Part shown: in pieces, positions 4,149-55,240 of the stretch | How the letters are laid out: every line of letters starts with the position of its first letter | Numbering within the stretch: position 1 is the first letter of the stretch | IMG/VR virus record: IMGVR_UViG_3300043411_000942 | Location: 1 to 64,000 of that record | Strand: one strand, 5' to 3' | DNA: 64,000 nucleotides | Position numbers and translations under genes: made by a program | Notes under the pieces: model-generated | The model's database searches: none | Told to the model about the DNA's origin: nothing | The model's input: only the letters and a program-made list of their open reading frames with translations

Positions 4149-5366
4149 ATGCTAAGTGAACTTGAGATTCAGCTAGTAACCAAGTATATCTTGAGCCTCG
4201 ATGAGCGATCAGACCGCTATGGGGATGAGTTGGTAGACCACGTACTCCATCGCGTATCCTATCTCAACTATGATGATGGGGTCGATTGGGACACCTATGG
4301 AGCTATCTGCTCGTTTAGGGATGCGTTTGAAGATGAAGCACGAGTGGCCTTTGTTGAGAGAGTCCTCCAAGGAGATAGCCCACAAGTAAGTGCCAAACAA
4401 CCCGATGCCCCATGTCACATTCTGGCTGCGAGTCAATTTGACATCAAGACTATCGACCTCGTATTCAAAAGGGCTCAGGAAATAGAGCATTCGACAACTG
4501 AGAGACTTCTACACAAGCTACAGGGTAAGACCTTGGCTTGCGTTTTCTATGAGCCGTCTACCCGAACATCCTCCAGCTTCATTGCTGCAATGGGTAAGCT
4601 TGGTGGGAACGTGATACCCATCACACAAGGGGTCCAGTACTCAAGTGTTTCCAAGGGTGAGTCGCTAGAAGATACGATCGTCACCTTGGGTCAATATGCA
4701 GATGCAATTGTTCTTCGTCATCCTACGGTAGGGGCTTCAGCTCTTGCGGCTAGCGTTAGTCCCGTGCCAATCATCAATGCAGGGGATGGTATTAGTGAGC
4801 ACCCCACGCAAGCTCTTCTAGACCTCTACACGATCCAAAGAGAATTTGGGCGTACCTCCAACCTTAAGGTAGCCTTTGTAGGGGACCTTGCGAATGGACG
4901 GACGATCCACAGCTTAGCTGCACTCTTAGCGCTCTACCCAGGAAATGAGTTCTCCCTGGTATCCCCATTCCTACTGAAGCTAAGTCATGATTCGGCTCCT
5001 TACCTGCGAATCAAAGACAAGGTAACCCATGAGATTCACGTAAAGGATAGCCTGGTAAAGGCTGAGGAGGTCTTGGCAGAGGCAGACGTGGTCTACATGA
5101 CGCGAATCCAGAGAGAGCGGTTCGGGTTCCTAGAGAACTACTCTGAGGTAAAGGACTCCTGCATCCTCACGGAGGAGCTAGTAAGGAAGCTCAAGCCCTC
5201 GGCACGTATTCTACACCCCCTCCCGCGAGTCAACGAGATTCCAAGGGAGATCGACTCTGACCCTAGAGCGGCCTACTTCCGAGAGGTCAAAATGGGGCTT
5301 TACGTGAGGATGGCCCTCCTAGACCTAACAATGGGGTCTACCTCCCCTTGGCTACCCAACCTATAA
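4149..5366 (+). CDS. pyrB: Aspartate carbamoyltransferase catalytic subunit with an N-terminal extension of about 85 aa
   Basis: FYEPSTRT, SKGESLEDT, LRHP, INAGDG..EHPTQALLD, GDLANGRT, YMTRIQRER and HPLPR motifs. Confidence 0.96.
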   Translation: MLSELEIQLVTKYILSLDERSDRYGDELVDHVLHRVSYLNYDDGVDWDTYGAICSFRDAFEDEARVAFVERVLQGDSPQVSAKQPDAPCHILAASQFDIKTIDLVFKRAQEIEHSTTERLLHKLQGKTLACVFYEPSTRTSSSFIAAMGKLGGNVIPITQGVQYSSVSKGESLEDTIVTLGQYADAIVLRHPTVGASALAASVSPVPIINAGDGISEHPTQALLDLYTIQREFGRTSNLKVAFVGDLANGRTIHSLAALLALYPGNEFSLVSPFLLKLSHDSAPYLRIKDKVTHEIHVKDSLVKAEEVLAEADVVYMTRIQRERFGFLENYSEVKDSCILTEELVRKLKPSARILHPLPRVNEIPREIDSDPRAAYFREVKMGLYVRMALLDLTMGSTSPWLPNL

Positions 5367-22801: not shown

Positions 22802-24517
22802 TCACTTCACATGCTTTGCGAGGTAGCTAAGAGCTAGCTTCTTAATGTGTCCTGGGTCCACCTGAAGCCGTTCGAGCAGGTCTCCCTCCTCTGGCTTGAG
22901 GGCTCCGTCCAGTTGCTGGAGCTTCAAACCTAGAACCTCGGATACGATAGGGTCAGACCCTGTATTGGCAGTGAGGTAGTAAGCGACCACGGGGTTACCT
23001 TGACCATCTCGATAGACTCTAGCCAGACACTGATCCATTACACCAGGAGACCAATCCAACTCCGCAAATACGACAGTACTGCACTTGAATTGTAGCCCGT
23101 CCAACCCAGCCCCACTTCGTAGGGACATGAGAAGGATCTGACTATCTCCATCGCAGAATGCCTTCTTAGCTCTCTCTTTTTGACCTACCGTCTCAGACCC
23201 TGTATAGAGTAGGGGATTGAACTCCTTTAGGCGGTCTAGAAGGATGCTATACACCTCCCGATGCCAAGCGAAAACAAGGATCTTCTCCCCACTCTCAGCA
23301 AGCATCTTCACGAACTCCGCAACAAATGGCACTTTTGCCACTCCTGTTGCTTGTCGGAGCTTGTTGGATAGCTCCTCAGAGGCGAGCATCTTGGCCCCCT
23401 TCTTGACCTCTTTCTCTCCAAGGATGATTCGAGCAAGCTCCATGCAAGCATCGTTGACCTTGTTGAGGGCCTCAGGGTTTGCGTCTACCGTATGCTCAAT
23501 CTTCTGTAGAGCCGGTAGCTCTCTCGCAATGTCCTTGCGCGTTCTCCGTAGCATCATCCCAGAGCCTCGAAGATACTCTCCAAACGCCTTTGGCGAGGCT
23601 AGCCTAGGCTTATCTCCATAGGTGTGAGAACACCACTCCCGAGTAAACTCCTCGAATGACCCGAGTTGGCCAGGGAACAGGATGTTCAGAACAGCGTAGA
23701 ACTCACCTCCATAGTTGAAAATAGGAGTCGCACTCAAACCGCTACGATACTGAGCACTTTCCGAAAGCATTGCCGCTGCCTGGTACTTCGCTGGAGTCTT
23801 CGATCCAAACCCAGACCTTAGCTCTTGAATCTCATCGAAAATGACAGACTTCAATCCCGACTCGGATAGCGTGTGAGCCCAACGGGCCAGCTTCGCGTAA
23901 TTCAGGATGGTAACGTCAGGAAACTGAGGGGCAATCTTGTACTTCTTCGCTACGGCCTTTGTCAGGTCGTAGGGGTTACCTACCTTAACCACATGAGTCT
24001 TCAACTGAGGTAGAAAGCGATTGACTTGCTCTTCCCACTGAGGAGGAAGGCTGGTCATCGTAACTACCAAGGCTGGAAGGGTCTTGGCGTCACTGAGGGT
24101 ACAGAGCGCTGATACCGTCTTCCCCGTGCCAAGATCGTCAGCAAGAAGCAATGCTCCTGTAGACAGAATCAGGTCTCCTGCAATCTTCTGGTAGTCCCTG
24201 GGGGGTAGGGCCAGGTCAAAGCTACGAGTTGTTGACGGGTTCGCTAGGAACCTCTGAACGAGACTCTCTTTTTCCTTGTGGACGGAGGACCGACCCTGAA
24301 GACGCTCAAGATCTAGAGCGGACACCTCGTAGGGCTCATATCTAGAGATGAACCATTCCAGGTCTCTTGCGGTCTCAGGGGAGTCGCTGAGGTGGAGGGC
24401 CTTACTAGGACCTTGCTGGGCCTTCGAGAAGACCCGCTTTGCTCGCATCAAGATGTGAGGTGGGGCTTCTAAAACCCACTCTTTTTTCTTGACTCCATAG
24501 CTTAACCTCATAGCCAA
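22802..24517 (-). CDS. SNF2-family helicase/ATPase
   Basis: LLADDLGTGKT, DEIQ, LSATP, MLRR, GAGLDGLQ, ELDWSP and QCLARVYRDGQ. Confidence 0.92.
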   Translation of the reverse strand: MAMRLSYGVKKKEWVLEAPPHILMRAKRVFSKAQQGPSKALHLSDSPETARDLEWFISRYEPYEVSALDLERLQGRSSVHKEKESLVQRFLANPSTTRSFDLALPPRDYQKIAGDLILSTGALLLADDLGTGKTVSALCTLSDAKTLPALVVTMTSLPPQWEEQVNRFLPQLKTHVVKVGNPYDLTKAVAKKYKIAPQFPDVTILNYAKLARWAHTLSESGLKSVIFDEIQELRSGFGSKTPAKYQAAAMLSESAQYRSGLSATPIFNYGGEFYAVLNILFPGQLGSFEEFTREWCSHTYGDKPRLASPKAFGEYLRGSGMMLRRTRKDIARELPALQKIEHTVDANPEALNKVNDACMELARIILGEKEVKKGAKMLASEELSNKLRQATGVAKVPFVAEFVKMLAESGEKILVFAWHREVYSILLDRLKEFNPLLYTGSETVGQKERAKKAFCDGDSQILLMSLRSGAGLDGLQFKCSTVVFAELDWSPGVMDQCLARVYRDGQGNPVVAYYLTANTGSDPIVSEVLGLKLQQLDGALKPEEGDLLERLQVDPGHIKKLALSYLAKHVK

Positions 24518-33710: not shown

Positions 33711-36700
33711 ACTCGAATGAAGCCCGAATGAAGCCAACCTTTGACATACCCGTTTCCCCCATCAGAGAGTATGGAGACAGAGAATCCACCGGAGGGTGGT
33801 GGTTACCTTCAACGCTGGATGTTGTTCTATACTTCGGAAGCCTGAGCGAGCGAGTTCAACGAGACGTCGTACTCTTGGGTGGGGGTCTATGTGATGTCTA
33901 CAGTAGCGACGGATCCCGCAAAGAACGAGTAAAAACTATACCCCTCCGCCGAGTTCCTATAGAGAGCAAGATTCTAGTTCCACCTATGGGACCTACCTCC
34001 CTACAGTGGTGTGCCCAAATAGTGGGGCGAATTTCATTCAAGAGCGTCAGGCTGCGTGCAAACATGCTGCCTCACCGTGTGGACAGTACACTTCACGCAG
34101 AGTTCAGTAGTTTCCCTAAGTACTCGTATGACGAAAATGACGTTTATACCACTACGCATAGGTACCTAACAACACTGTGCGGTATCTCCTGTGAAGCGGT
34201 ACCTACCGAGTCTATCCAACTTGGTATTCCAACCTGCCCCAAGTGCCTAGAGTCCAAAACCTGGACGTCCGCGATCGTTTTGCCTTACACGCCACCTGAG
34301 GTACTCCGTAAGAGAGATCGAAAGACCCAGCAAGAGCGTCGCGCTAGAGCAAGGATACCCTCAAGGTACGACCGTGCCCTAGAAGGCCCACAACCAAAAA
34401 CCTCAATTCTCCCCATCTACCAAGAGCTTGACCCAGAGGACCTCTACGTGGGACGAGAGTTGAAGCTTCAGGCTCGGGAGCGTAACTAGATGGACTCCAG
34501 AGTATCGATCTACAGCAGAGAGTTTACAGCAGCTGTTGAACGCGCAGACACTGCCGAGTTTACACTAGCTGAGGTTAGGCGCTTAGCTCAGGTCGTTCCG
34601 CCATCTACAGCTATGCAAACAACGGAAGAGGAGCGCAAGTACTGGAGCTACGACCCAGAGGTCCGCCCTCTTACCAAAGACCTTCAAGCTCTTCTGGAAG
34701 AGAACAAGAAGCTATGTACAAAGCTTTCAACGAGCTACGTATTGCCTGTGGCAGTCAAGTAGCGTACCTACCCATACGAGATGGAGTACTCGTCTTTCGA
34801 GATCTAGGCAACGCCATCGCAGATCGACTCAAGGGCTACACGGACCTACGCTCTACCACGATTCTGAAGAAGTGGGAGAAGGTGAAAAAGGTGTCTACAT
34901 GGCTTTGACCCGTGCTTGGGCACTGAATATAATTGGGTTCCAGGATGGTCCGCCACATAACCCCTCCGTGCGTGTCCAATGCCGAATGTCGGTTTTTCGC
35001 GACAAGGGGCTGGCAAAGCTGCACACTCAAATTTTGGGGTCTGATACTTGTATTCAACGAGTGCAGGCGAAAGTCACTAGGCTTACCAAGAACGATGGAG
35101 CATGGCGAATACCCGATGACCCAGAGGACCCGCTTCCTCTGCCTGGCATATACCCTACCCGGCTCGCTAAGATTCTCGCACGTCGAGTTCGCTACGGTGG
35201 TCCCAAAGGACGTCGAGCTGAAAAACGCATTCAGTGGTTAAAGCGTAACCGCAGGATCCGTAGTACTTGATGAAGCCAAGAACCCTCAGGTACAGAGACT
35301 GAGGCACCTGAGGGTTCTCGCTTCACCTTTCACTGGAGACCGCCATGATCCTCAAATACTACAGCCTCAAGTGCAACAACCTGGTGGTGGATTCAAACTA
35401 CCAGACTTTGGATGGAGCCCAAAAAGCCCTGGTAGAGAAGGCCACCTACCTTGAGTGGCATCGGGGAGTCTGTATCGCAAATAAGACTCCAATGTCCTTC
35501 GAGGCATCTTGGTACGGTGGGTCTGCTTACTGGGAAGTCGTAGAAGTCTCTTTGGAGTTGCTGTAATGCTACTAGACCAAATCGACTGGGAAGACCTGGA
35601 GTACCACCTGGAAACTCGTGAAGAAGATGACCCTGAGGCCATCCTTCACGAGTTAGCCCATGTTGTTGATGCTCTTGGCGCCAAAAGAGCCTTCCTAGGT
35701 GGCTTCGGAAACCAAAATAAGGTCCATCAAATCATCACGTCTACCTTCTCTACGCCAAAGGAGCTGGAAGCTACAGAGATGAGAGCAACGGCTATTACAG
35801 TCCAGGTGCTTGACATCCTTGCCCCAGAGATGAGTCACTTCGAGTCTGGTTACAATGCCATGCTTTCGAATCTTCCTAAGGGCGCTACAGCAACAAAAAG
35901 ACATCAAGCCTTGACCCAGTGCTTGACCTCACCCGCTGTTCAGTCCTCTGTGAAGGCCATACTGCTCTTCCTAGAGGACTTCCTTCACGAGGATGAGGAT
36001 GAGTAATAAAGACGAATTCCCCACAACGAGTACGATCCTACTTGTCACCCAGACTACAGCTCTACCGAAACGCCCACCAGGTAAGAAGACATGAATCACT
36101 GCTACTCTGACATCCTTTCTCGAATCAAAGACCCACCTCTATGGTTCGATGAGAATGCCGTCCCCCGTTGGTGCAAGTTTGAACCAGGGTTTGCGAACAT
36201 CTATGCAAGAGAGGCTGTTCTTGGAGTCGTCCGATGCCAGGCTTGCCATCGTGAGTTCCACGTAGCCATGTCGTGTACGAGGTATGAGGAGCACCAACTG
36301 AGTTCCCTTGCAGCCGATCGTCAGCTACATTACGGAGATCCACCAAATGTCGAATGTTGCGATGTTGGGTTGAGCATGAACTCGGAATTCCTAAGAGTCC
36401 TAGAGTTCTGGTCTAAGACCCGGTCTGGATGGGACTTCAATTGGACCAGGGTCCCTGAGCTTGAGGGGGTGGAGTATGACCCATAAAGACCAGTGCAGCT
36501 GTAACCTGTGCAATACTTACAAATTGCTACGTCTAGATAAAAACCCGTACCGAACATCTGACACAACAGACCACATCCGACGTTTGGAGGATCTCTTGCT
36601 AGAAGCTAAAGCTAAGTCACCAAGTAAATCTGAGACTAAGTGGCTAGTATTCACCATAGTCTCCGTGATTCTAGCTGGAGTGGCCTTCGACCAAAAGCAT

Positions 36701-53858: not shown

Positions 53859-54329
53859 ATGACGATGACAAAGGAAGAGTTGCTCGCGTGTATTGAGAAG
53901 AAGGTCACTGACCTTGCCACTATCGCTGCCGGGAAGGCACGGTTGGAGGGGCAGGAGAGGGCCTTCATTGCTGAGCTGCTTGCGGCTCATGGGAAGGGAC
54001 CCCACATGGTGCTGGGTAAGCCCAAGTTCATCTTCACCAGCAAGACAGGTAACGTCTACATCTCTGACCCTCGCGGTACCATGAAGGGTGTCAAGCGAGG
54101 CCCCCGTAAGCCCAAGGTGGCTCCTCCGGTGGAGACGGTGGCTGAGGTTCCGATGGCTGCGGCTGTTACCGCCTCGGCTGAGGAGGAGGCTCCTGAGGCT
54201 CCTGAGGATGAGGCTCCTGAGTCGGGTGGCTTCACGGCTGAGCAGCTGGCGGACAAGCCAGAGGATGCCTTTGAGGGCTCGGAGGATGAGGATGATGAGG
54301 ATCCTCTCGCTGGACTGGACCTCGACTGA
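53859..54329 (+). CDS. Protein with a basic KRGPRKPK segment and a very acidic C-terminal tail; possible nucleoid-associated protein
   Basis: Promoter at 53811-53836, AAGGAG SD, strongly biased codons (GAG/GCT/AAG). Confidence 0.7.
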   Translation: MTMTKEELLACIEKKVTDLATIAAGKARLEGQERAFIAELLAAHGKGPHMVLGKPKFIFTSKTGNVYISDPRGTMKGVKRGPRKPKVAPPVETVAEVPMAAAVTASAEEEAPEAPEDEAPESGGFTAEQLADKPEDAFEGSEDEDDEDPLAGLDLD

Positions 54330-54336
54330 GATGACT

Positions 54337-54372
54337 GGGGTGTAGGAGAGCTGGAACTCTCTCCTACACCCC
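54337..54372 (+). other. Strong hairpin without a U-tract (processing/stabilising site or weak terminator)
   Basis: ggggtgtaggagag...ctctcctacacccc. Confidence 0.65.
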
Positions 54373-54479
54373 CTTAGAGGGCAGAAGACTGAGCACACTG
54401 CATGGTGACCTAGGAGAGCTAGGTACGGCTTGTTGTGTGGCCTGTGAAACACAGTGCGCTCATTCTCCTGCCCTCTAAG
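54373..54479 (+). ncRNA. Unrecognised structured RNA motif, copy 1
   Basis: Closing stem of about 25 bp around the core ATGGTG-[acctag GAGAG ctaggt]-ACGGC-N10-GCC-TGTGAAACA. Strand inferred from flanking genes. Confidence 0.7.
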
Positions 54480-54493
54480 AAAGACCCGATTAT

Positions 54494-54577
54494 GCCGAAT
54501 CGCGAGGCCGCAAGGCCGTAAGGGCGACCCTCAGATGGCCAAGAGGGGATCAGGTTCAAGCCCTGGATTCGGCGCCT
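54494..54577 (+). ncRNA. Non-canonical tRNA-like element
   Basis: 7-bp acceptor stem GCCGAAT/ATTCGGC; T-arm TCAGG-TTCAAGC-CCTGG; stem CCCTC/GAGGG with a 10-nt loop; atypical D region (GGCC-GCAA-GGCC). Confidence 0.7.
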
Positions 54578-54587
54578 ATTACACTCA

Positions 54588-54685
54588 GGAGTAAAAGATT
54601 GAGCCTATTGAATGGTGTCCTGGGAGACCCAGGGACGGCGCATGTATGTCCGCTCATGAAACACAATAGGCTCGTTCTTTTGCCC
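54588..54685 (+). ncRNA. Unrecognised structured RNA motif, copy 2
   Basis: Closing stem of about 20 bp around the core ATGGTG-[tcctgg GAGAC ccaggg]-ACGGC-N12-GCT-CATGAAACA. Confidence 0.7.
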
Positions 54686-54852
54686 CTCAGGAGGCCCCAA
54701 TGCTCTGCGGTTACTGCCTAGGTCATTCAGTACGCTGAGGACACGGCCTACGCCCACGTCGCTCTAGCGGCCTCATGAAGTGTACACCGTACTCTTCCAA
54801 GAAGTATTCGCTAGGATCGTCAACGCCACCCAACTGTACTACTGAGTAACCC

Positions 54853-55029: not shown

Positions 55030-55240
55030 TTAAGGGTTAGCCCTGAGCGTACGTAGTAGAGTGTGGGTCACCTGAGACGTGACCCCTCTAAAACCGCGTG
55101 ATTATCTTTTCGATTACCGGTAAGAGCCCAAAACCGCGTATTCAGTTAGCGTATGGTCATGGTGCGGCGGTAAACCCCAAACTAAAGACTATCCAAGACA
55201 GACTATCCAAGACAGACTAGACTACCCAAGACTACCCCTC
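55030..55240 (+). repeat. Promoter motif followed by a non-coding hairpin and AAAACCGCGT / AGACTA(T/C)CCAAGAC repeats
   Basis: TTAA 55030, CGTA 55052, hairpin gggtcac-ctgagac-gtgaccc from 55065; repeats at about 55090, 55130 and 55185-55238. Confidence 0.65.

What the first reader, a model, noticed from the sequence alone, without database searches (positions are those of the whole stretch)
54494..54577. tRNA mimic with a canonical acceptor stem and T-arm but a rebuilt D-arm and a 10-nt 'anticodon' loop
Seen: a perfect 7-bp acceptor stem and a 5-bp T-stem with a TTCAAGC loop, then a G discriminator and CCT instead of CCA. The D region is about 27 nt with a GNRA hairpin, the anticodon-position loop is AGATGGCCAA, and the variable region is only 2 nt. 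Established: the acceptor/T half is the part recognised by RNase P, the CCA-adding enzyme and EF-Tu, and host anticodon nucleases (PrrC, RloC, PARIS AriB) attack tRNAs during infection. Inference: a non-decoding decoy or processing tag rather than a decayed tRNA, because all stems are intact.
Basis: partly seen in the sequence, partly recalled or inferred. Interest (0 to 1): 0.72.

Follow-up and report, generated by a model that had tools for sequence, protein, structure and literature searches.

The report
Anticodon-less tRNA-like RNA between two junction RNAs
A huge phage carries a strongly conserved RNA with the top half of a tRNA but no usable anticodon, wedged between two copies of a widespread, undescribed three-way-junction RNA; it most likely acts as a cutting handle for tRNA-processing enzymes rather than as a decoder.

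Summary
Positions 54494-54577 (+) hold a perfect 7-bp acceptor stem, a 5-bp T stem with a TTCAAGC loop, discriminator G and CCT. The rest is non-canonical: a 27-nt D region with a GGCC-GCAA-GGCC hairpin, a 10-nt "anticodon" loop and a 2-nt variable region.

The acceptor plus T-arm signature is expected 0.025 times per shuffled 233-kb genome. ARAGORN and Rfam 15 call nothing there.

It is not a decayed tRNA. In eight related phage contigs the neighbouring gene is only 82-84% identical in DNA. The 84 nt differ at one site, which toggles U·G and C-G in the first T-stem pair.

The context is new. The element lies between two paralogous ~107-nt hairpins whose tops are a three-way-junction (3WJ) RNA motif. 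That motif is absent from Rfam, found in about 55 distinct phage or metagenome sequences, and has strong covariation. It sits next to tRNAs or other anticodon-less tRNA-likes far more often than chance predicts.

In most relatives the tRNA-like sits directly in front of the ribosome-binding site of a 72-aa ORF that this genome has lost.

Best reading: a non-decoding tRNA-like processing handle (RNase P, RNase Z, CCA addition) inside a processed non-coding cassette. The invariant lower half suggests an additional, unknown role. The decoy idea is untested.

The parts
54337..54372 (+). Perfect 14-bp GC-rich hairpin directly after the stop codon of the 156-aa gene (53859-54329). No U tract follows, so it is more likely an mRNA 3'-end protecting or processing hairpin than an intrinsic terminator.
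   Evidence: Inverted repeat I4. It forms in the 371-nt fold. It is kept in G001 as a shorter (about 10-bp) stem of partly different outer sequence. It is not reported by the terminator scan.
54373..54479 (+). hpA: a 107-nt hairpin. A 28-nt-arm lower stem with conserved single mismatches carries a three-way-junction (3WJ) RNA core at 54393-54459.
   Evidence: I1 arms are 89% complementary. Fold -57.4 kcal/mol, z -7.18. Covariance model R1 scores 74.8 bits. It is 96-99% identical in relatives. The variants 54457 C>T and 54467 C>T turn A·C mismatches into A-U pairs.
54480..54493 (+). Spacer between hpA and the tRNA-like. It is not conserved and occurs as two unrelated haplotypes, of 14 nt and 19 nt.
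   Evidence: The 5-nt length difference also rules out the mechanical ORF 54454-54594 as coding.
54494..54574 (+). The tRNA-like RNA: acceptor stem (54494-54500 / 54567-54573), D region with a GNRA hairpin (54501-54527), stem with a 10-nt loop (54528-54547), a 2-nt variable region, T arm (54550-54566) and discriminator G (54574).
   Evidence: Sequence. Signature statistics. No ARAGORN or Rfam call. Invariant in eight relatives except 54550 T/C.
54575..54577 (+). CCT 3' tail. It is conserved in all relatives, and sequence homology between relatives stops exactly after it.
   Evidence: Loose ends appear after 54577 in read contigs.
54584..54690 (+). hpB: the second 107-nt hairpin, a paralogue of hpA, with its 3WJ core at 54603-54671. 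In most relatives a 72-aa ORF separates it from the tRNA-like.
   Evidence: I2. 82% identical to hpA, with compensatory stem changes. Fold z -4.85. R1 scores 82.9 bits. 93% identical in relatives, with all changes in the P3 loop.

Best explanation
The element is a tRNA-derived, non-decoding RNA.

It keeps the part of a tRNA that processing enzymes recognise: the 12-bp acceptor/T-arm stack, the T loop, the discriminator and an encoded CC. Its D and anticodon regions have been rebuilt into shapes that cannot present an anticodon.

It sits inside one transcribed non-coding cassette: stop codon, hairpin, 3WJ RNA (hpA), spacer, tRNA-like, then [RBS + 72-aa ORF in most relatives, deleted here], then 3WJ RNA (hpB).

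Proposed mechanism (inferred, not shown):
1. RNase P cuts at 54493/54494.
2. A tRNA 3'-end pathway (RNase Z or RNase E plus exonucleases, then the phage's own CCA-adding-type enzyme) trims after 54574.
3. The upstream 3WJ RNA is thereby separated from what follows. The downstream mRNA or second 3WJ RNA gains a defined 5' end, and a stable ~81-nt tRNA-like species is released.
4. The long lower stems of hpA and hpB, with their conserved mismatches, are candidate double-strand RNase (RNase III-type) sites that would complete the excision.

The lower half, including the 10-nt loop with its UGGCCA palindrome and the GCAA hairpin, is as invariant as the top half. The released RNA therefore probably has a further role of its own, such as binding a protein or another RNA, which cannot be named from sequence.
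For: Shown:
- tRNA-type acceptor and T arm are present far beyond chance.
- The element cannot be a standard tRNA.
- It varies at one site in eight relatives, and that site switches U·G and C-G in the first T-stem pair. Meanwhile the flanking gene is 82-84% identical and the spacer exists as two unrelated haplotypes.
- It is single-copy and flanked by the only two copies of the 3WJ motif, both in G000 (232,937 b) and in the 380-kb relative G001.
- The 3WJ motif is a genuine structured RNA: 16 of 20 pairs change on both sides and 94% of cells pair, against 30-44% when the partners are slid.
- 8 of 55 distinct 3WJ sequences have a strict tRNA signature within 150 nt on the same strand, against 1.1% expected (binomial P about 2e-7). 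These neighbours include tRNA-Met 5 nt upstream, a tRNA with an odd anticodon loop (8 nt as ARAGORN reads it) 8 nt upstream, and ARAGORN-negative tRNA-likes with 4- or 5-nt loops 13-14 nt upstream whose stems covary.
- In most relatives the tRNA-like is followed after 10 nt by GGAG and then ATG of a 72-aa ORF.
- Short contigs from RNA-type libraries cover 54340-54717 at depth 6-38, while the neighbouring 54124-54339 and 54718-54825 read 0.
- The phage encodes a PolyA_pol/CCA-adding-type enzyme, and almost none of its tRNAs carry an encoded CCA.

Inferred: every enzymatic step.
Against: - No read ends or processing sites could be seen. The only data were assembled contigs, and the contig breaks are explained by strain variation. 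The libraries are only guessed to be RNA.
- A pure processing tag should tolerate change in its lower half, yet that half is invariant.
- Thermodynamic folding prefers an alternative to the T stem by 3.1 kcal/mol.
- There is no covariation for the tRNA-like itself, because no relative diverges by more than one nucleotide. Pattern scans of IMG/VR found no distant homologue.
- The genomes are mosaics, and another nearby gene is also 98-99% identical. Part of the conservation could therefore reflect recent exchange.
- About 85% of 3WJ copies have no tRNA next to them.
Confidence: 0.42

Rival explanations
1. Decoy or sponge. The released tRNA-like RNA titrates a host factor that recognises the tRNA top half or overall tRNA shape. 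Candidates include a tRNA-targeting defence nuclease or toxin, a tRNA-modifying enzyme, or RNase P itself. This would protect the phage's 46 tRNAs or the host pool. It is the first reader's main idea.
For: - The whole 84 nt, including both non-tRNA loops, is invariant across relatives, which fits a specific binding partner.
- The genome invests heavily in tRNAs and a tmRNA.
- A second anticodon-less tRNA-like, with a D-loop hairpin and a 5-nt loop, is kept in the tRNA array and shows a compensatory G-C to A-U change in G001.
Against: - The 10-nt loop does not mimic a 7-nt anticodon loop, so known anticodon nucleases (PrrC, RloC and PARIS AriB, from background knowledge) have no obvious target in it.
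- Analogous elements in other phages have unrelated 4-, 5- and 8-nt loops.
- No defence or anti-defence family was found among the neighbours.
- Nothing addresses abundance, which a sponge would need.
Confidence: 0.2
2. A cis-acting 5'-leader element of the downstream small ORF. The tRNA-like fold, placed 10 nt before the ribosome-binding site, would stabilise the mRNA 5' end or tune translation initiation without being cut out.
For: In G001 and six of the seven further related contigs (L090, L091, L093, L095-L097; L094 ends at the tRNA-like) the element directly precedes GGAG-N6-ATG of a 72-aa ORF. In several other loci the 3WJ motif lies 25-50 nt upstream of start codons.
Against: - This genome and L091 lost the ORF by two independent deletions yet kept the tRNA-like unchanged.
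- A canonical T loop and acceptor stem are not needed merely to stabilise an mRNA end.
Confidence: 0.15
3. A real decoding or aminoacylated tRNA of unusual architecture, for example an expanded-loop frameshift or recoding tRNA.
For: The same genome has other odd tRNAs, such as a 9-nt anticodon loop at 133304 and the ARAGORN '???' call at 133602. The acceptor stem, discriminator and T arm are intact.
Against: - There is at best a 3-bp D stem, with no residues 8-9 linker.
- The variable region is 2 nt and the loop 10 nt, with no U33-like context.
- Neither ARAGORN (even at -ps95) nor Rfam RF00005 (even at E<=10) scores it.
- It lies 70 kb away from the tRNA array.
Confidence: 0.05
4. A dead tRNA relic, or a recombination scar such as an old attachment-site copy, with no present function.
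For: Homology between relatives breaks exactly at its 3' end, and different sequences are joined there. tRNA 3' ends are classical recombination points (background knowledge).
Against: - There are 0-1 changes in 84 nt, where a rate like the neighbouring gene's would give about 14.
- The spacer just upstream has been replaced entirely while the element stayed intact.
- All stems are intact.
- It is seen in RNA-type libraries.
Confidence: 0.05

Closest known systems
tRNA-like processing elements that free a neighbouring RNA. Examples: mascRNA at the MALAT1 3' end (PMC8457004), the tRNA-like in Arabidopsis GUT15 (PMC6152437), and the vtRNA-pre-miRNA units of murine gammaherpesvirus 68 (PMC4337559). 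All three were listed; mechanistic details are from background knowledge.
   Same: All have a tRNA-shaped module with no decoding role. It is embedded in a longer transcript next to other structured RNAs and recognised by RNase P and/or RNase Z, so the flanking RNA gets a defined end.
   Different: Those are eukaryotic or eukaryotic-virus systems that keep cloverleaf-like D and anticodon arms. This element is in a phage, has a hairpin inserted in the D region and a 10-nt loop, and no processing has been demonstrated.
Stable non-tRNA RNAs co-encoded and co-processed with phage tRNAs (T4 'species 1' and 'species 2' RNAs). This comparison rests on background knowledge and was not checked here.
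   Same: Both are phage-encoded small stable RNAs of unknown function that share tRNA-type ends and are thought to be matured by the tRNA machinery.
   Different: The T4 RNAs lie inside the tRNA cluster. This element lies 70 kb from the array, between two 3WJ RNAs. There is no sequence relation.
Bacterial and phage Y-RNA-like YrlA, which has a tRNA-like domain and binds the Ro orthologue Rsr (background knowledge; a family of this kind is believed to be in Rfam).
   Same: Both are non-decoding RNAs with a tRNA-like T arm and acceptor mimic, and YrlA also occurs in phages.
   Different: There is no Rfam match at E<=10. No TROVE/Ro gene is present in G000 or G001. YrlA replaces the anticodon arm with a long Ro-binding stem formed by the RNA's ends; here the ends form the acceptor stem.
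Theta (HDV-like) ribozymes adjacent to phage tRNAs (PMC10879173). This comparison is for the flanking 3WJ motif.
   Same: Both are small structured RNAs with conserved cores, found in phages and enriched right next to tRNA genes on the same strand.
   Different: - Theta ribozymes abut the tRNA 3' end within ±1 nt in 77% of tRNA-associated cases, and 58% of all copies are tRNA-associated.
- The 3WJ lies 5-14 nt away, and only about 15% of copies are tRNA-associated.
- The 3WJ fold (three helices, no nested double pseudoknot) does not fit HDV-like ribozymes.
- No Rfam ribozyme model matches.
- Self-cleavage is untested.
HK022 put RNAs, putL and putR (PMC9378689). This is also a comparison for the 3WJ motif.
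   Same: Both are about 70 nt with two stem-loops, occur as two similar copies per phage, lie in leaders of phage transcription units, and are not tied to any one downstream gene family.
   Different: put RNAs are not described there as closed by an outer helix joining the two stem-loops and share no recognisable sequence with the 3WJ. Promoter proximity of the 3WJ is only weakly supported. Antitermination is untested.

Membership tests
Canonical tRNA (Rfam RF00005 / ARAGORN) | 7-bp acceptor stem with a discriminator base | tested here: met
   GCCGAAT/ATTCGGC gives 7 Watson-Crick pairs, followed by G at 54574. The strict signature scan finds the element.
Canonical tRNA (Rfam RF00005 / ARAGORN) | T arm: 5-bp stem abutting the acceptor stem and a 7-nt T-Psi-C-type loop closed by G53-C61 | tested here: met
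   TCAGG-TTCAAGC-CCTGG. The first pair is U·G here and C-G in six of the seven related sequences. However, the stem has only 0-8% pairing probability in the thermodynamic ensemble.
Canonical tRNA (Rfam RF00005 / ARAGORN) | D arm: 3-4-bp stem after two linker residues, with a 7-11-nt loop | tested here: not met
   The 27-nt region allows at most a 3-bp stem (CGC/GCG) with no 8-9 linker. It contains an inserted GGCC-GCAA-GGCC hairpin.
Canonical tRNA (Rfam RF00005 / ARAGORN) | Anticodon arm: 5-bp stem with a 7-nt loop | tested here: not met
   The 5-bp stem is present, but the loop is 10 nt, AGATGGCCAA.
Canonical tRNA (Rfam RF00005 / ARAGORN) | Scores as a tRNA with standard detectors | tested here: not met
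   ARAGORN gives no call, not even at -ps95. Rfam gives no hit at E<=10 on 101 nt.
tmRNA tRNA-like domain | Acceptor and T arm joined to a tag-encoding reading frame and pseudoknots (about 300-400 nt, or two pieces) | tested here: not met
   The element closes on itself in 81 nt. ARAGORN with -m finds the phage's real tmRNA at 152390-152745 and nothing here. There is no Rfam tmRNA hit.
Y-RNA-like YrlA | Match to a Y-RNA-like (YrlA) Rfam model, and a Ro/Rsr (TROVE) protein partner | tested here: not met
   No Rfam hit at E<=10. PF05731 is absent from G000 and from the 380-kb relative, while the positive controls were detected.
tRNA-like processing handle (mascRNA / vtRNA type) | Intact acceptor/T-arm stack without a decoding anticodon arm, embedded beside other functional RNAs in one transcript | tested here: met
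   Structure. Flanked by hpA and hpB, and by an ORF in relatives. RNA-type contigs join hpA and the tRNA-like (records 4 and 9).
tRNA-like processing handle (mascRNA / vtRNA type) | Cleavage by RNase P at the 5' end and by RNase Z (or equivalent) at the 3' end, followed by CCA addition | not testable with these tools
   Only assembled contigs were available, so there are no read ends. The attempt to model the phage CCA-adding-type enzyme with the RNA was not folded by the tool.
3WJ motif as a self-cleaving ribozyme class (hammerhead, twister, twister-sister, pistol, hatchet, HDV-like, hairpin) | Match to any Rfam ribozyme model, or to its core sequence | tested here: not met
   No hits at E<=5 to 10 on four representative loci. 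By eye, CUGANGA is absent and the helix order does not fit HDV-like ribozymes.
3WJ motif as a riboswitch | Association with a recurring downstream gene family | tested here: not met
   The first downstream ORFs of about 50 loci form no cluster beyond near-identical contigs.

The most novel reading that the evidence does not exclude
The tRNA-like and the 3WJ RNA may be two halves of a previously unrecognised phage RNA module. In this reading the 3WJ is a new functional RNA class with an invariant AUGGUG / GGAGA loop / AC / GAAACA core. It could be a self-cleaving or processing ribozyme, or an RNA that binds RNA polymerase, the ribosome or tRNA 3' ends. Phages would repeatedly couple it to tRNAs or to anticodon-less tRNA mimics so that the host tRNA-maturation machinery delivers it in active form. 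The invariant lower half of this tRNA-like, with its palindromic UGGCCA loop and GNRA hairpin, would then be a specific docking surface, for example for dimerisation or for the 3WJ, rather than leftover tRNA.
Probability: 0.15. Interest if true: 0.85.

Novelty: new variant of a known kind. Interest (0 to 1): 0.62.

Why it matters
Huge phages are known for large tRNA sets, but the non-decoding tRNA-shaped RNAs they carry are missed by every standard annotator. This case shows such an element under very strong constraint and points to a use of tRNA shape in phage RNA processing, a device so far documented mainly in eukaryotes and their viruses.

It also uncovered a 3WJ RNA motif that is widespread in soil, freshwater and wastewater phage sequences. 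The motif has strong covariation, matches no Rfam family, and is statistically linked to tRNAs. That makes it a concrete, testable candidate for a new regulatory or catalytic RNA class.

Tried and rejected
1. Known RNA families. Rfam gave nothing at gathering or permissive thresholds on the window, on the 101-nt element or on representative 3WJ loci. The only hits were long-hairpin look-alikes of miRNA precursors and terminator-driven sRNA hits.
2. Distant homologues of the tRNA-like, sought for covariation. Three pattern scans of IMG/VR found only the close relative G001 and one chance match inside a coding region. Protein-guided retrieval gave eight contigs, all with an essentially identical element.
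3. The GTDB genome scan for the 3WJ returned 12 matches. None shows the GGAGA loop or an evident closing helix, so they look like chance.
4. BLAST of a 3WJ copy against isolated phages gave only chance matches. The best candidate, Arthrobacter phage Bumble, scored 18 bits with the model.
5. A literature search for the core sequences found only primers. General searches found no description of the motif.
6. Riboswitch reading of the 3WJ: no conserved downstream gene.
7. Promoter proximity of the 3WJ: the excess of -10-like hexamers is small (0.14 against 0.04 per locus at 20-29 nt) and confounded by composition, so it is not claimed.
8. HDV-like, hammerhead and hairpin-ribozyme folds were considered by eye for the 3WJ. 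They were rejected because the helix order and core do not fit.
10. Contig ends at 54445 and 54474 in RNA-type libraries looked like RNA ends. They overlap by exactly 30 nt, so they are assembly-graph branch points caused by strain variants.
11. The mechanical ORFs over the element (54454-54594 + and 54419-54559 -) were rejected. The spacer has a 5-nt length polymorphism and neither ORF is conserved.

Full report
**What the window is.** The window is the first 64 kb of a 232,937-b IMG/VR virus record (G000) that CheckV rates about half complete. A close relative, G001, is 379,936 b long and has direct terminal repeats. Outside the window, between 72 and 153 kb, the genome carries 46 ARAGORN tRNAs and a tmRNA. 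It is therefore a huge phage. DNA runs from freshwater, groundwater, wastewater and estuary metagenomes contain the stretch. Around the finding, all plausible genes are short ORFs on the + strand with no Pfam or PHROG function.

**The observation.**
- a perfect 7-bp acceptor stem (54494-54500 with 54567-54573);
- a 5-bp T stem with the loop TTCAAGC (54550-54566);
- discriminator G at 54574, then CCT;
- a 27-nt D region containing GGCC-GCAA-GGCC;
- a 5-bp stem with the 10-nt loop AGATGGCCAA;
- a 2-nt variable region.

I scanned the whole genome for the strict acceptor plus T-arm signature. There are 41 instances, all on the + strand. Forty first-order Markov random sequences built from the genome give a mean of 0.025. 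The tRNA-type top half is therefore not chance.

ARAGORN does not call the element, even at a relaxed threshold. Rfam 15 reports nothing at E<=10 on the isolated 101 nt: no tRNA, tmRNA or Y-RNA-like family.

One caveat applies. Free-energy folding prefers pairing of AGGGC (positions 28-32 of the element) with GCCCU (67-71) over the T stem by 3.1 kcal/mol, and the element's z-score is unremarkable.

**It is maintained, not decaying.** Homologues of the upstream 156-aa protein (65-98% identical) led to eight further contigs. In G001 and seven of them (L090, L091, L093-L097) the 84 nt are identical to the window except at position 54550. That site is T or C, giving U·G or C-G in the first T-stem pair. 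DNA identity to the window by segment:

| Segment | Identity to G000 |
|---|---|
| Adjacent 156-aa gene | 82-84% |
| Hairpin after the gene | about 92% (one contig 84%) |
| hpA | 96-99% |
| tRNA-like | 98.8-100% |
| hpB | about 93% |

The 14-nt spacer between hpA and the tRNA-like has been replaced in some relatives by an unrelated 19-nt sequence, while both flanking elements stayed intact. That argues for selection rather than recent sharing. These genomes are mosaics, however, and another nearby gene is also 98-99% identical. Because no relative diverges further, there is no covariation evidence for the lower half of the element. IMG/VR pattern scans found no distant homologue.

The element lies between two paralogous 107-nt hairpins, hpA (54373-54479) and hpB (54584-54690). 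They are 82% identical, with compensatory changes in their stems. Their fold z-scores are -7.2 and -4.9, and the 371-nt region scores -7.6.

The top of each hairpin is a three-way junction with this layout:
- closing helix P1;
- C, then AUG-GUG;
- hairpin P2 with a GGAGA-type loop;
- AC;
- hairpin P3, of variable length;
- (C)AU-GAAACA, then back to P1.

A pattern built from this core found three unrelated high-GC phage contigs in IMG/VR and 60 metagenome contigs, many of them apparently from soil or rhizosphere samples.

A covariance model, R1, built from seven sequences recovers them at 33-84 bits. On 60 distinct rows, 16 of 20 pairs show changes on both sides. Cells are paired 94% of the time, against 30-44% when the partners are slid. 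Invariance of the core letters is partly forced by the search pattern; the helices are not.

The motif matches nothing in Rfam and nothing in the searchable literature. A GTDB genome scan gave only chance-like matches. G000 and G001 each contain exactly two copies, the two that flank the tRNA-like.

**Link between the 3WJ and tRNAs.** Of 55 distinct 3WJ sequences, 8 have a strict tRNA signature within 150 nt on the same strand. The density of such signatures elsewhere in the same contigs predicts 1.1%, giving a binomial P of about 2e-7. Two of the eight are near-duplicates. Cases:
- tRNA-Met ends 5 nt before the motif in L045.
- A tRNA with an odd anticodon loop (8 nt as ARAGORN reads it, 6 nt with a seventh stem pair) ends 8 nt before it in L052.
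- The motif sits inside a tRNA array in L043.

Most telling are L051 and L071/L086. These are homologous loci in which an ARAGORN-negative tRNA-like lies 13-14 nt upstream of the 3WJ. The hairpin in the anticodon position has a 5-nt loop in L051 and a 4-nt loop in L071/L086. The stems differ between the two with compensation.

G000 itself keeps a second such element at 143690. It has an intact cloverleaf with a 31-nt hairpin inserted in the D loop and a 5-nt loop. G001 preserves it with a G-C to A-U compensatory change. Anticodon-less tRNA shapes are therefore a recurring device, and their "anticodon" loops share no sequence.

**Ancestral layout.** In G001 and five of the other contigs (L090, L093, L095-L097) the order is as follows:
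1. the 156-aa gene;
2. hairpin;
3. hpA;
4. spacer;
5. tRNA-like;
6. 10 nt containing GGAG, then ATG of a 72-aa ORF of unknown function (weak PHROG hits only);
7. hpB (no hpB match was found in L097).

G000 has lost the ORF by a deletion that starts exactly after the CCT tail. L091 has a different deletion that fuses the early ORF into the middle of hpB. In L094 two genes are inserted upstream, and hpA plus the tRNA-like stay together. The unit hpA + tRNA-like is thus constant, while the ORF and hpB are dispensable or movable.

**Expression.** Libraries guessed to be RNA, from two coded organisms across many studies, hold 30-38% of the sampled words of 54330-54700. When laid on the region, their short contigs cover 54369-54474, 54445-54577, 54371-54563 and 54584-54688 at depth 2-38. 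The neighbouring bins 54124-54339 and 54718-54825 read 0.

The variants seen there fit the structures:
- Two C>T changes repair A·C mismatches in the hpA stem.
- All hpB changes fall in the P3 loop.
- None is listed within the tRNA-like.

This fits an abundant, stable RNA. It is not proof: the data are contigs, the library type is guessed, and no molecule ends are visible. Apparent ends at 54445 and 54474 are a 30-nt assembly-graph overlap.

**Mechanism.** The evidence supports a functional, non-decoding, tRNA-derived RNA with high confidence. For how it works, the best-supported reading is a processing handle.

The preserved part is what RNase P, RNase Z and CCA-adding enzymes recognise (established knowledge). 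The phage encodes a CCA-adding-type nucleotidyltransferase, and nearly all of its tRNAs need CCA added. The element sits at boundaries between structured RNAs and an mRNA. Other phages place tRNAs or tRNA mimics a few nucleotides from the same 3WJ.

The long lower stems of hpA and hpB share a conserved segment with single mismatches and look like double-strand RNase sites. Neither phage encodes an RNase III, so a host enzyme would be required. All cleavage steps are inferred.

The complete invariance of the lower half is not explained by a mere tag. This includes a loop with the palindrome UGGCCA and a GNRA hairpin. It leaves room for a decoy or binding role, which I rank second.

I found no evidence for the anticodon-nuclease decoy specifically. 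I also found no Ro/Y-RNA system.

**What the 3WJ is** remains open.
- It is not tied to any downstream gene family, which argues against a riboswitch.
- It resembles HK022 put RNAs in size, copy number and leader position, but not in fold or sequence.
- It resembles theta ribozymes in being enriched next to phage tRNAs, but not in fold, spacing or frequency of association.
- The excess of promoter-like hexamers upstream is weak. About a quarter of copies have a T run within 130 nt downstream.

**Verdict.** The element is a new variant of the known idea of tRNA-like processing or mimic RNAs. Its value is raised by the co-discovery of an undescribed, well-supported RNA motif family linked to tRNAs.

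Noticed in passing
window 54393-54459 and 54603-54671; also L006-L008 and L028-L087: A three-way-junction RNA motif (core AUGGUG / GGAGA-loop hairpin / AC / variable hairpin / GAAACA) is present in about 55 distinct phage and metagenome sequences. It has strong covariation, matches no Rfam family, and is significantly enriched next to tRNAs. L087 carries two tandem copies.
   Followed up: yes
G000:C1:143690-143796 (outside the window; locus L099), with the G001 counterpart in L100: A second ARAGORN-negative tRNA-like lies inside the tRNA array. It is a normal cloverleaf except for a 31-nt hairpin inserted in the D loop and a 5-nt loop (CGAAA) where the anticodon loop should be. It is 93% identical in G001, with a compensatory G-C to A-U change at the loop-closing pair.
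   Followed up: partly
G000:C1:133304-133373, 133619-133690 and 151688-151769 (outside the window): Further elements carry a strict acceptor/T-arm signature but are missed by default ARAGORN. One has a 9-nt anticodon loop, and one looks like a tRNA-Leu (UAA) with an odd D arm.
   Followed up: no
L004:962-1180; L090:3217-3435: A 72-aa ORF with its own GGAG ribosome-binding site directly follows the tRNA-like in most relatives. It has been deleted in this window (joint at 54577/54578) and, independently, in L091. Only weak matches to PHROGs of unknown function were found.
   Followed up: partly
window 55186-55232: Three direct copies of AGACTA(T/C)CCAAGAC lie in a non-coding stretch. A related strain's contig has several short deletions exactly here. 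This could be a protein-binding array or simply a slippage-prone repeat.
   Followed up: no
window 54337-54372: A perfect 14-bp hairpin follows the stop codon of the 156-aa gene and has no U tract after it. It is kept in relatives with partly different sequence.
   Followed up: partly
L051:1313-1461 and L071:830-969 (with L086): Homologous loci show a CATAAAT box, then an anticodon-less tRNA-like (5-nt or 4-nt loop), then a 3WJ with a long closing stem. This is an independent lineage with the same pairing of elements as in the window.
   Followed up: partly
window 35378-35466 (- strand): ARAGORN reports a 'tRNA-Pyl (cta)' here at the relaxed -ps95 setting only. It is probably a false positive.
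   Followed up: no
window 4149-5366, 499-2289 and 22802-24517: The phage encodes an aspartate/ornithine carbamoyltransferase-like protein, a protein with a transglycosylase domain, and an SNF2-type helicase.
   Followed up: no
window 54330-54700, in public runs X25-X40: Libraries of two coded, named organisms from many separate studies contain near-identical copies of just the non-coding cassette. Whether these organisms are hosts, carriers or share a contaminant was not resolved.
   Followed up: partly
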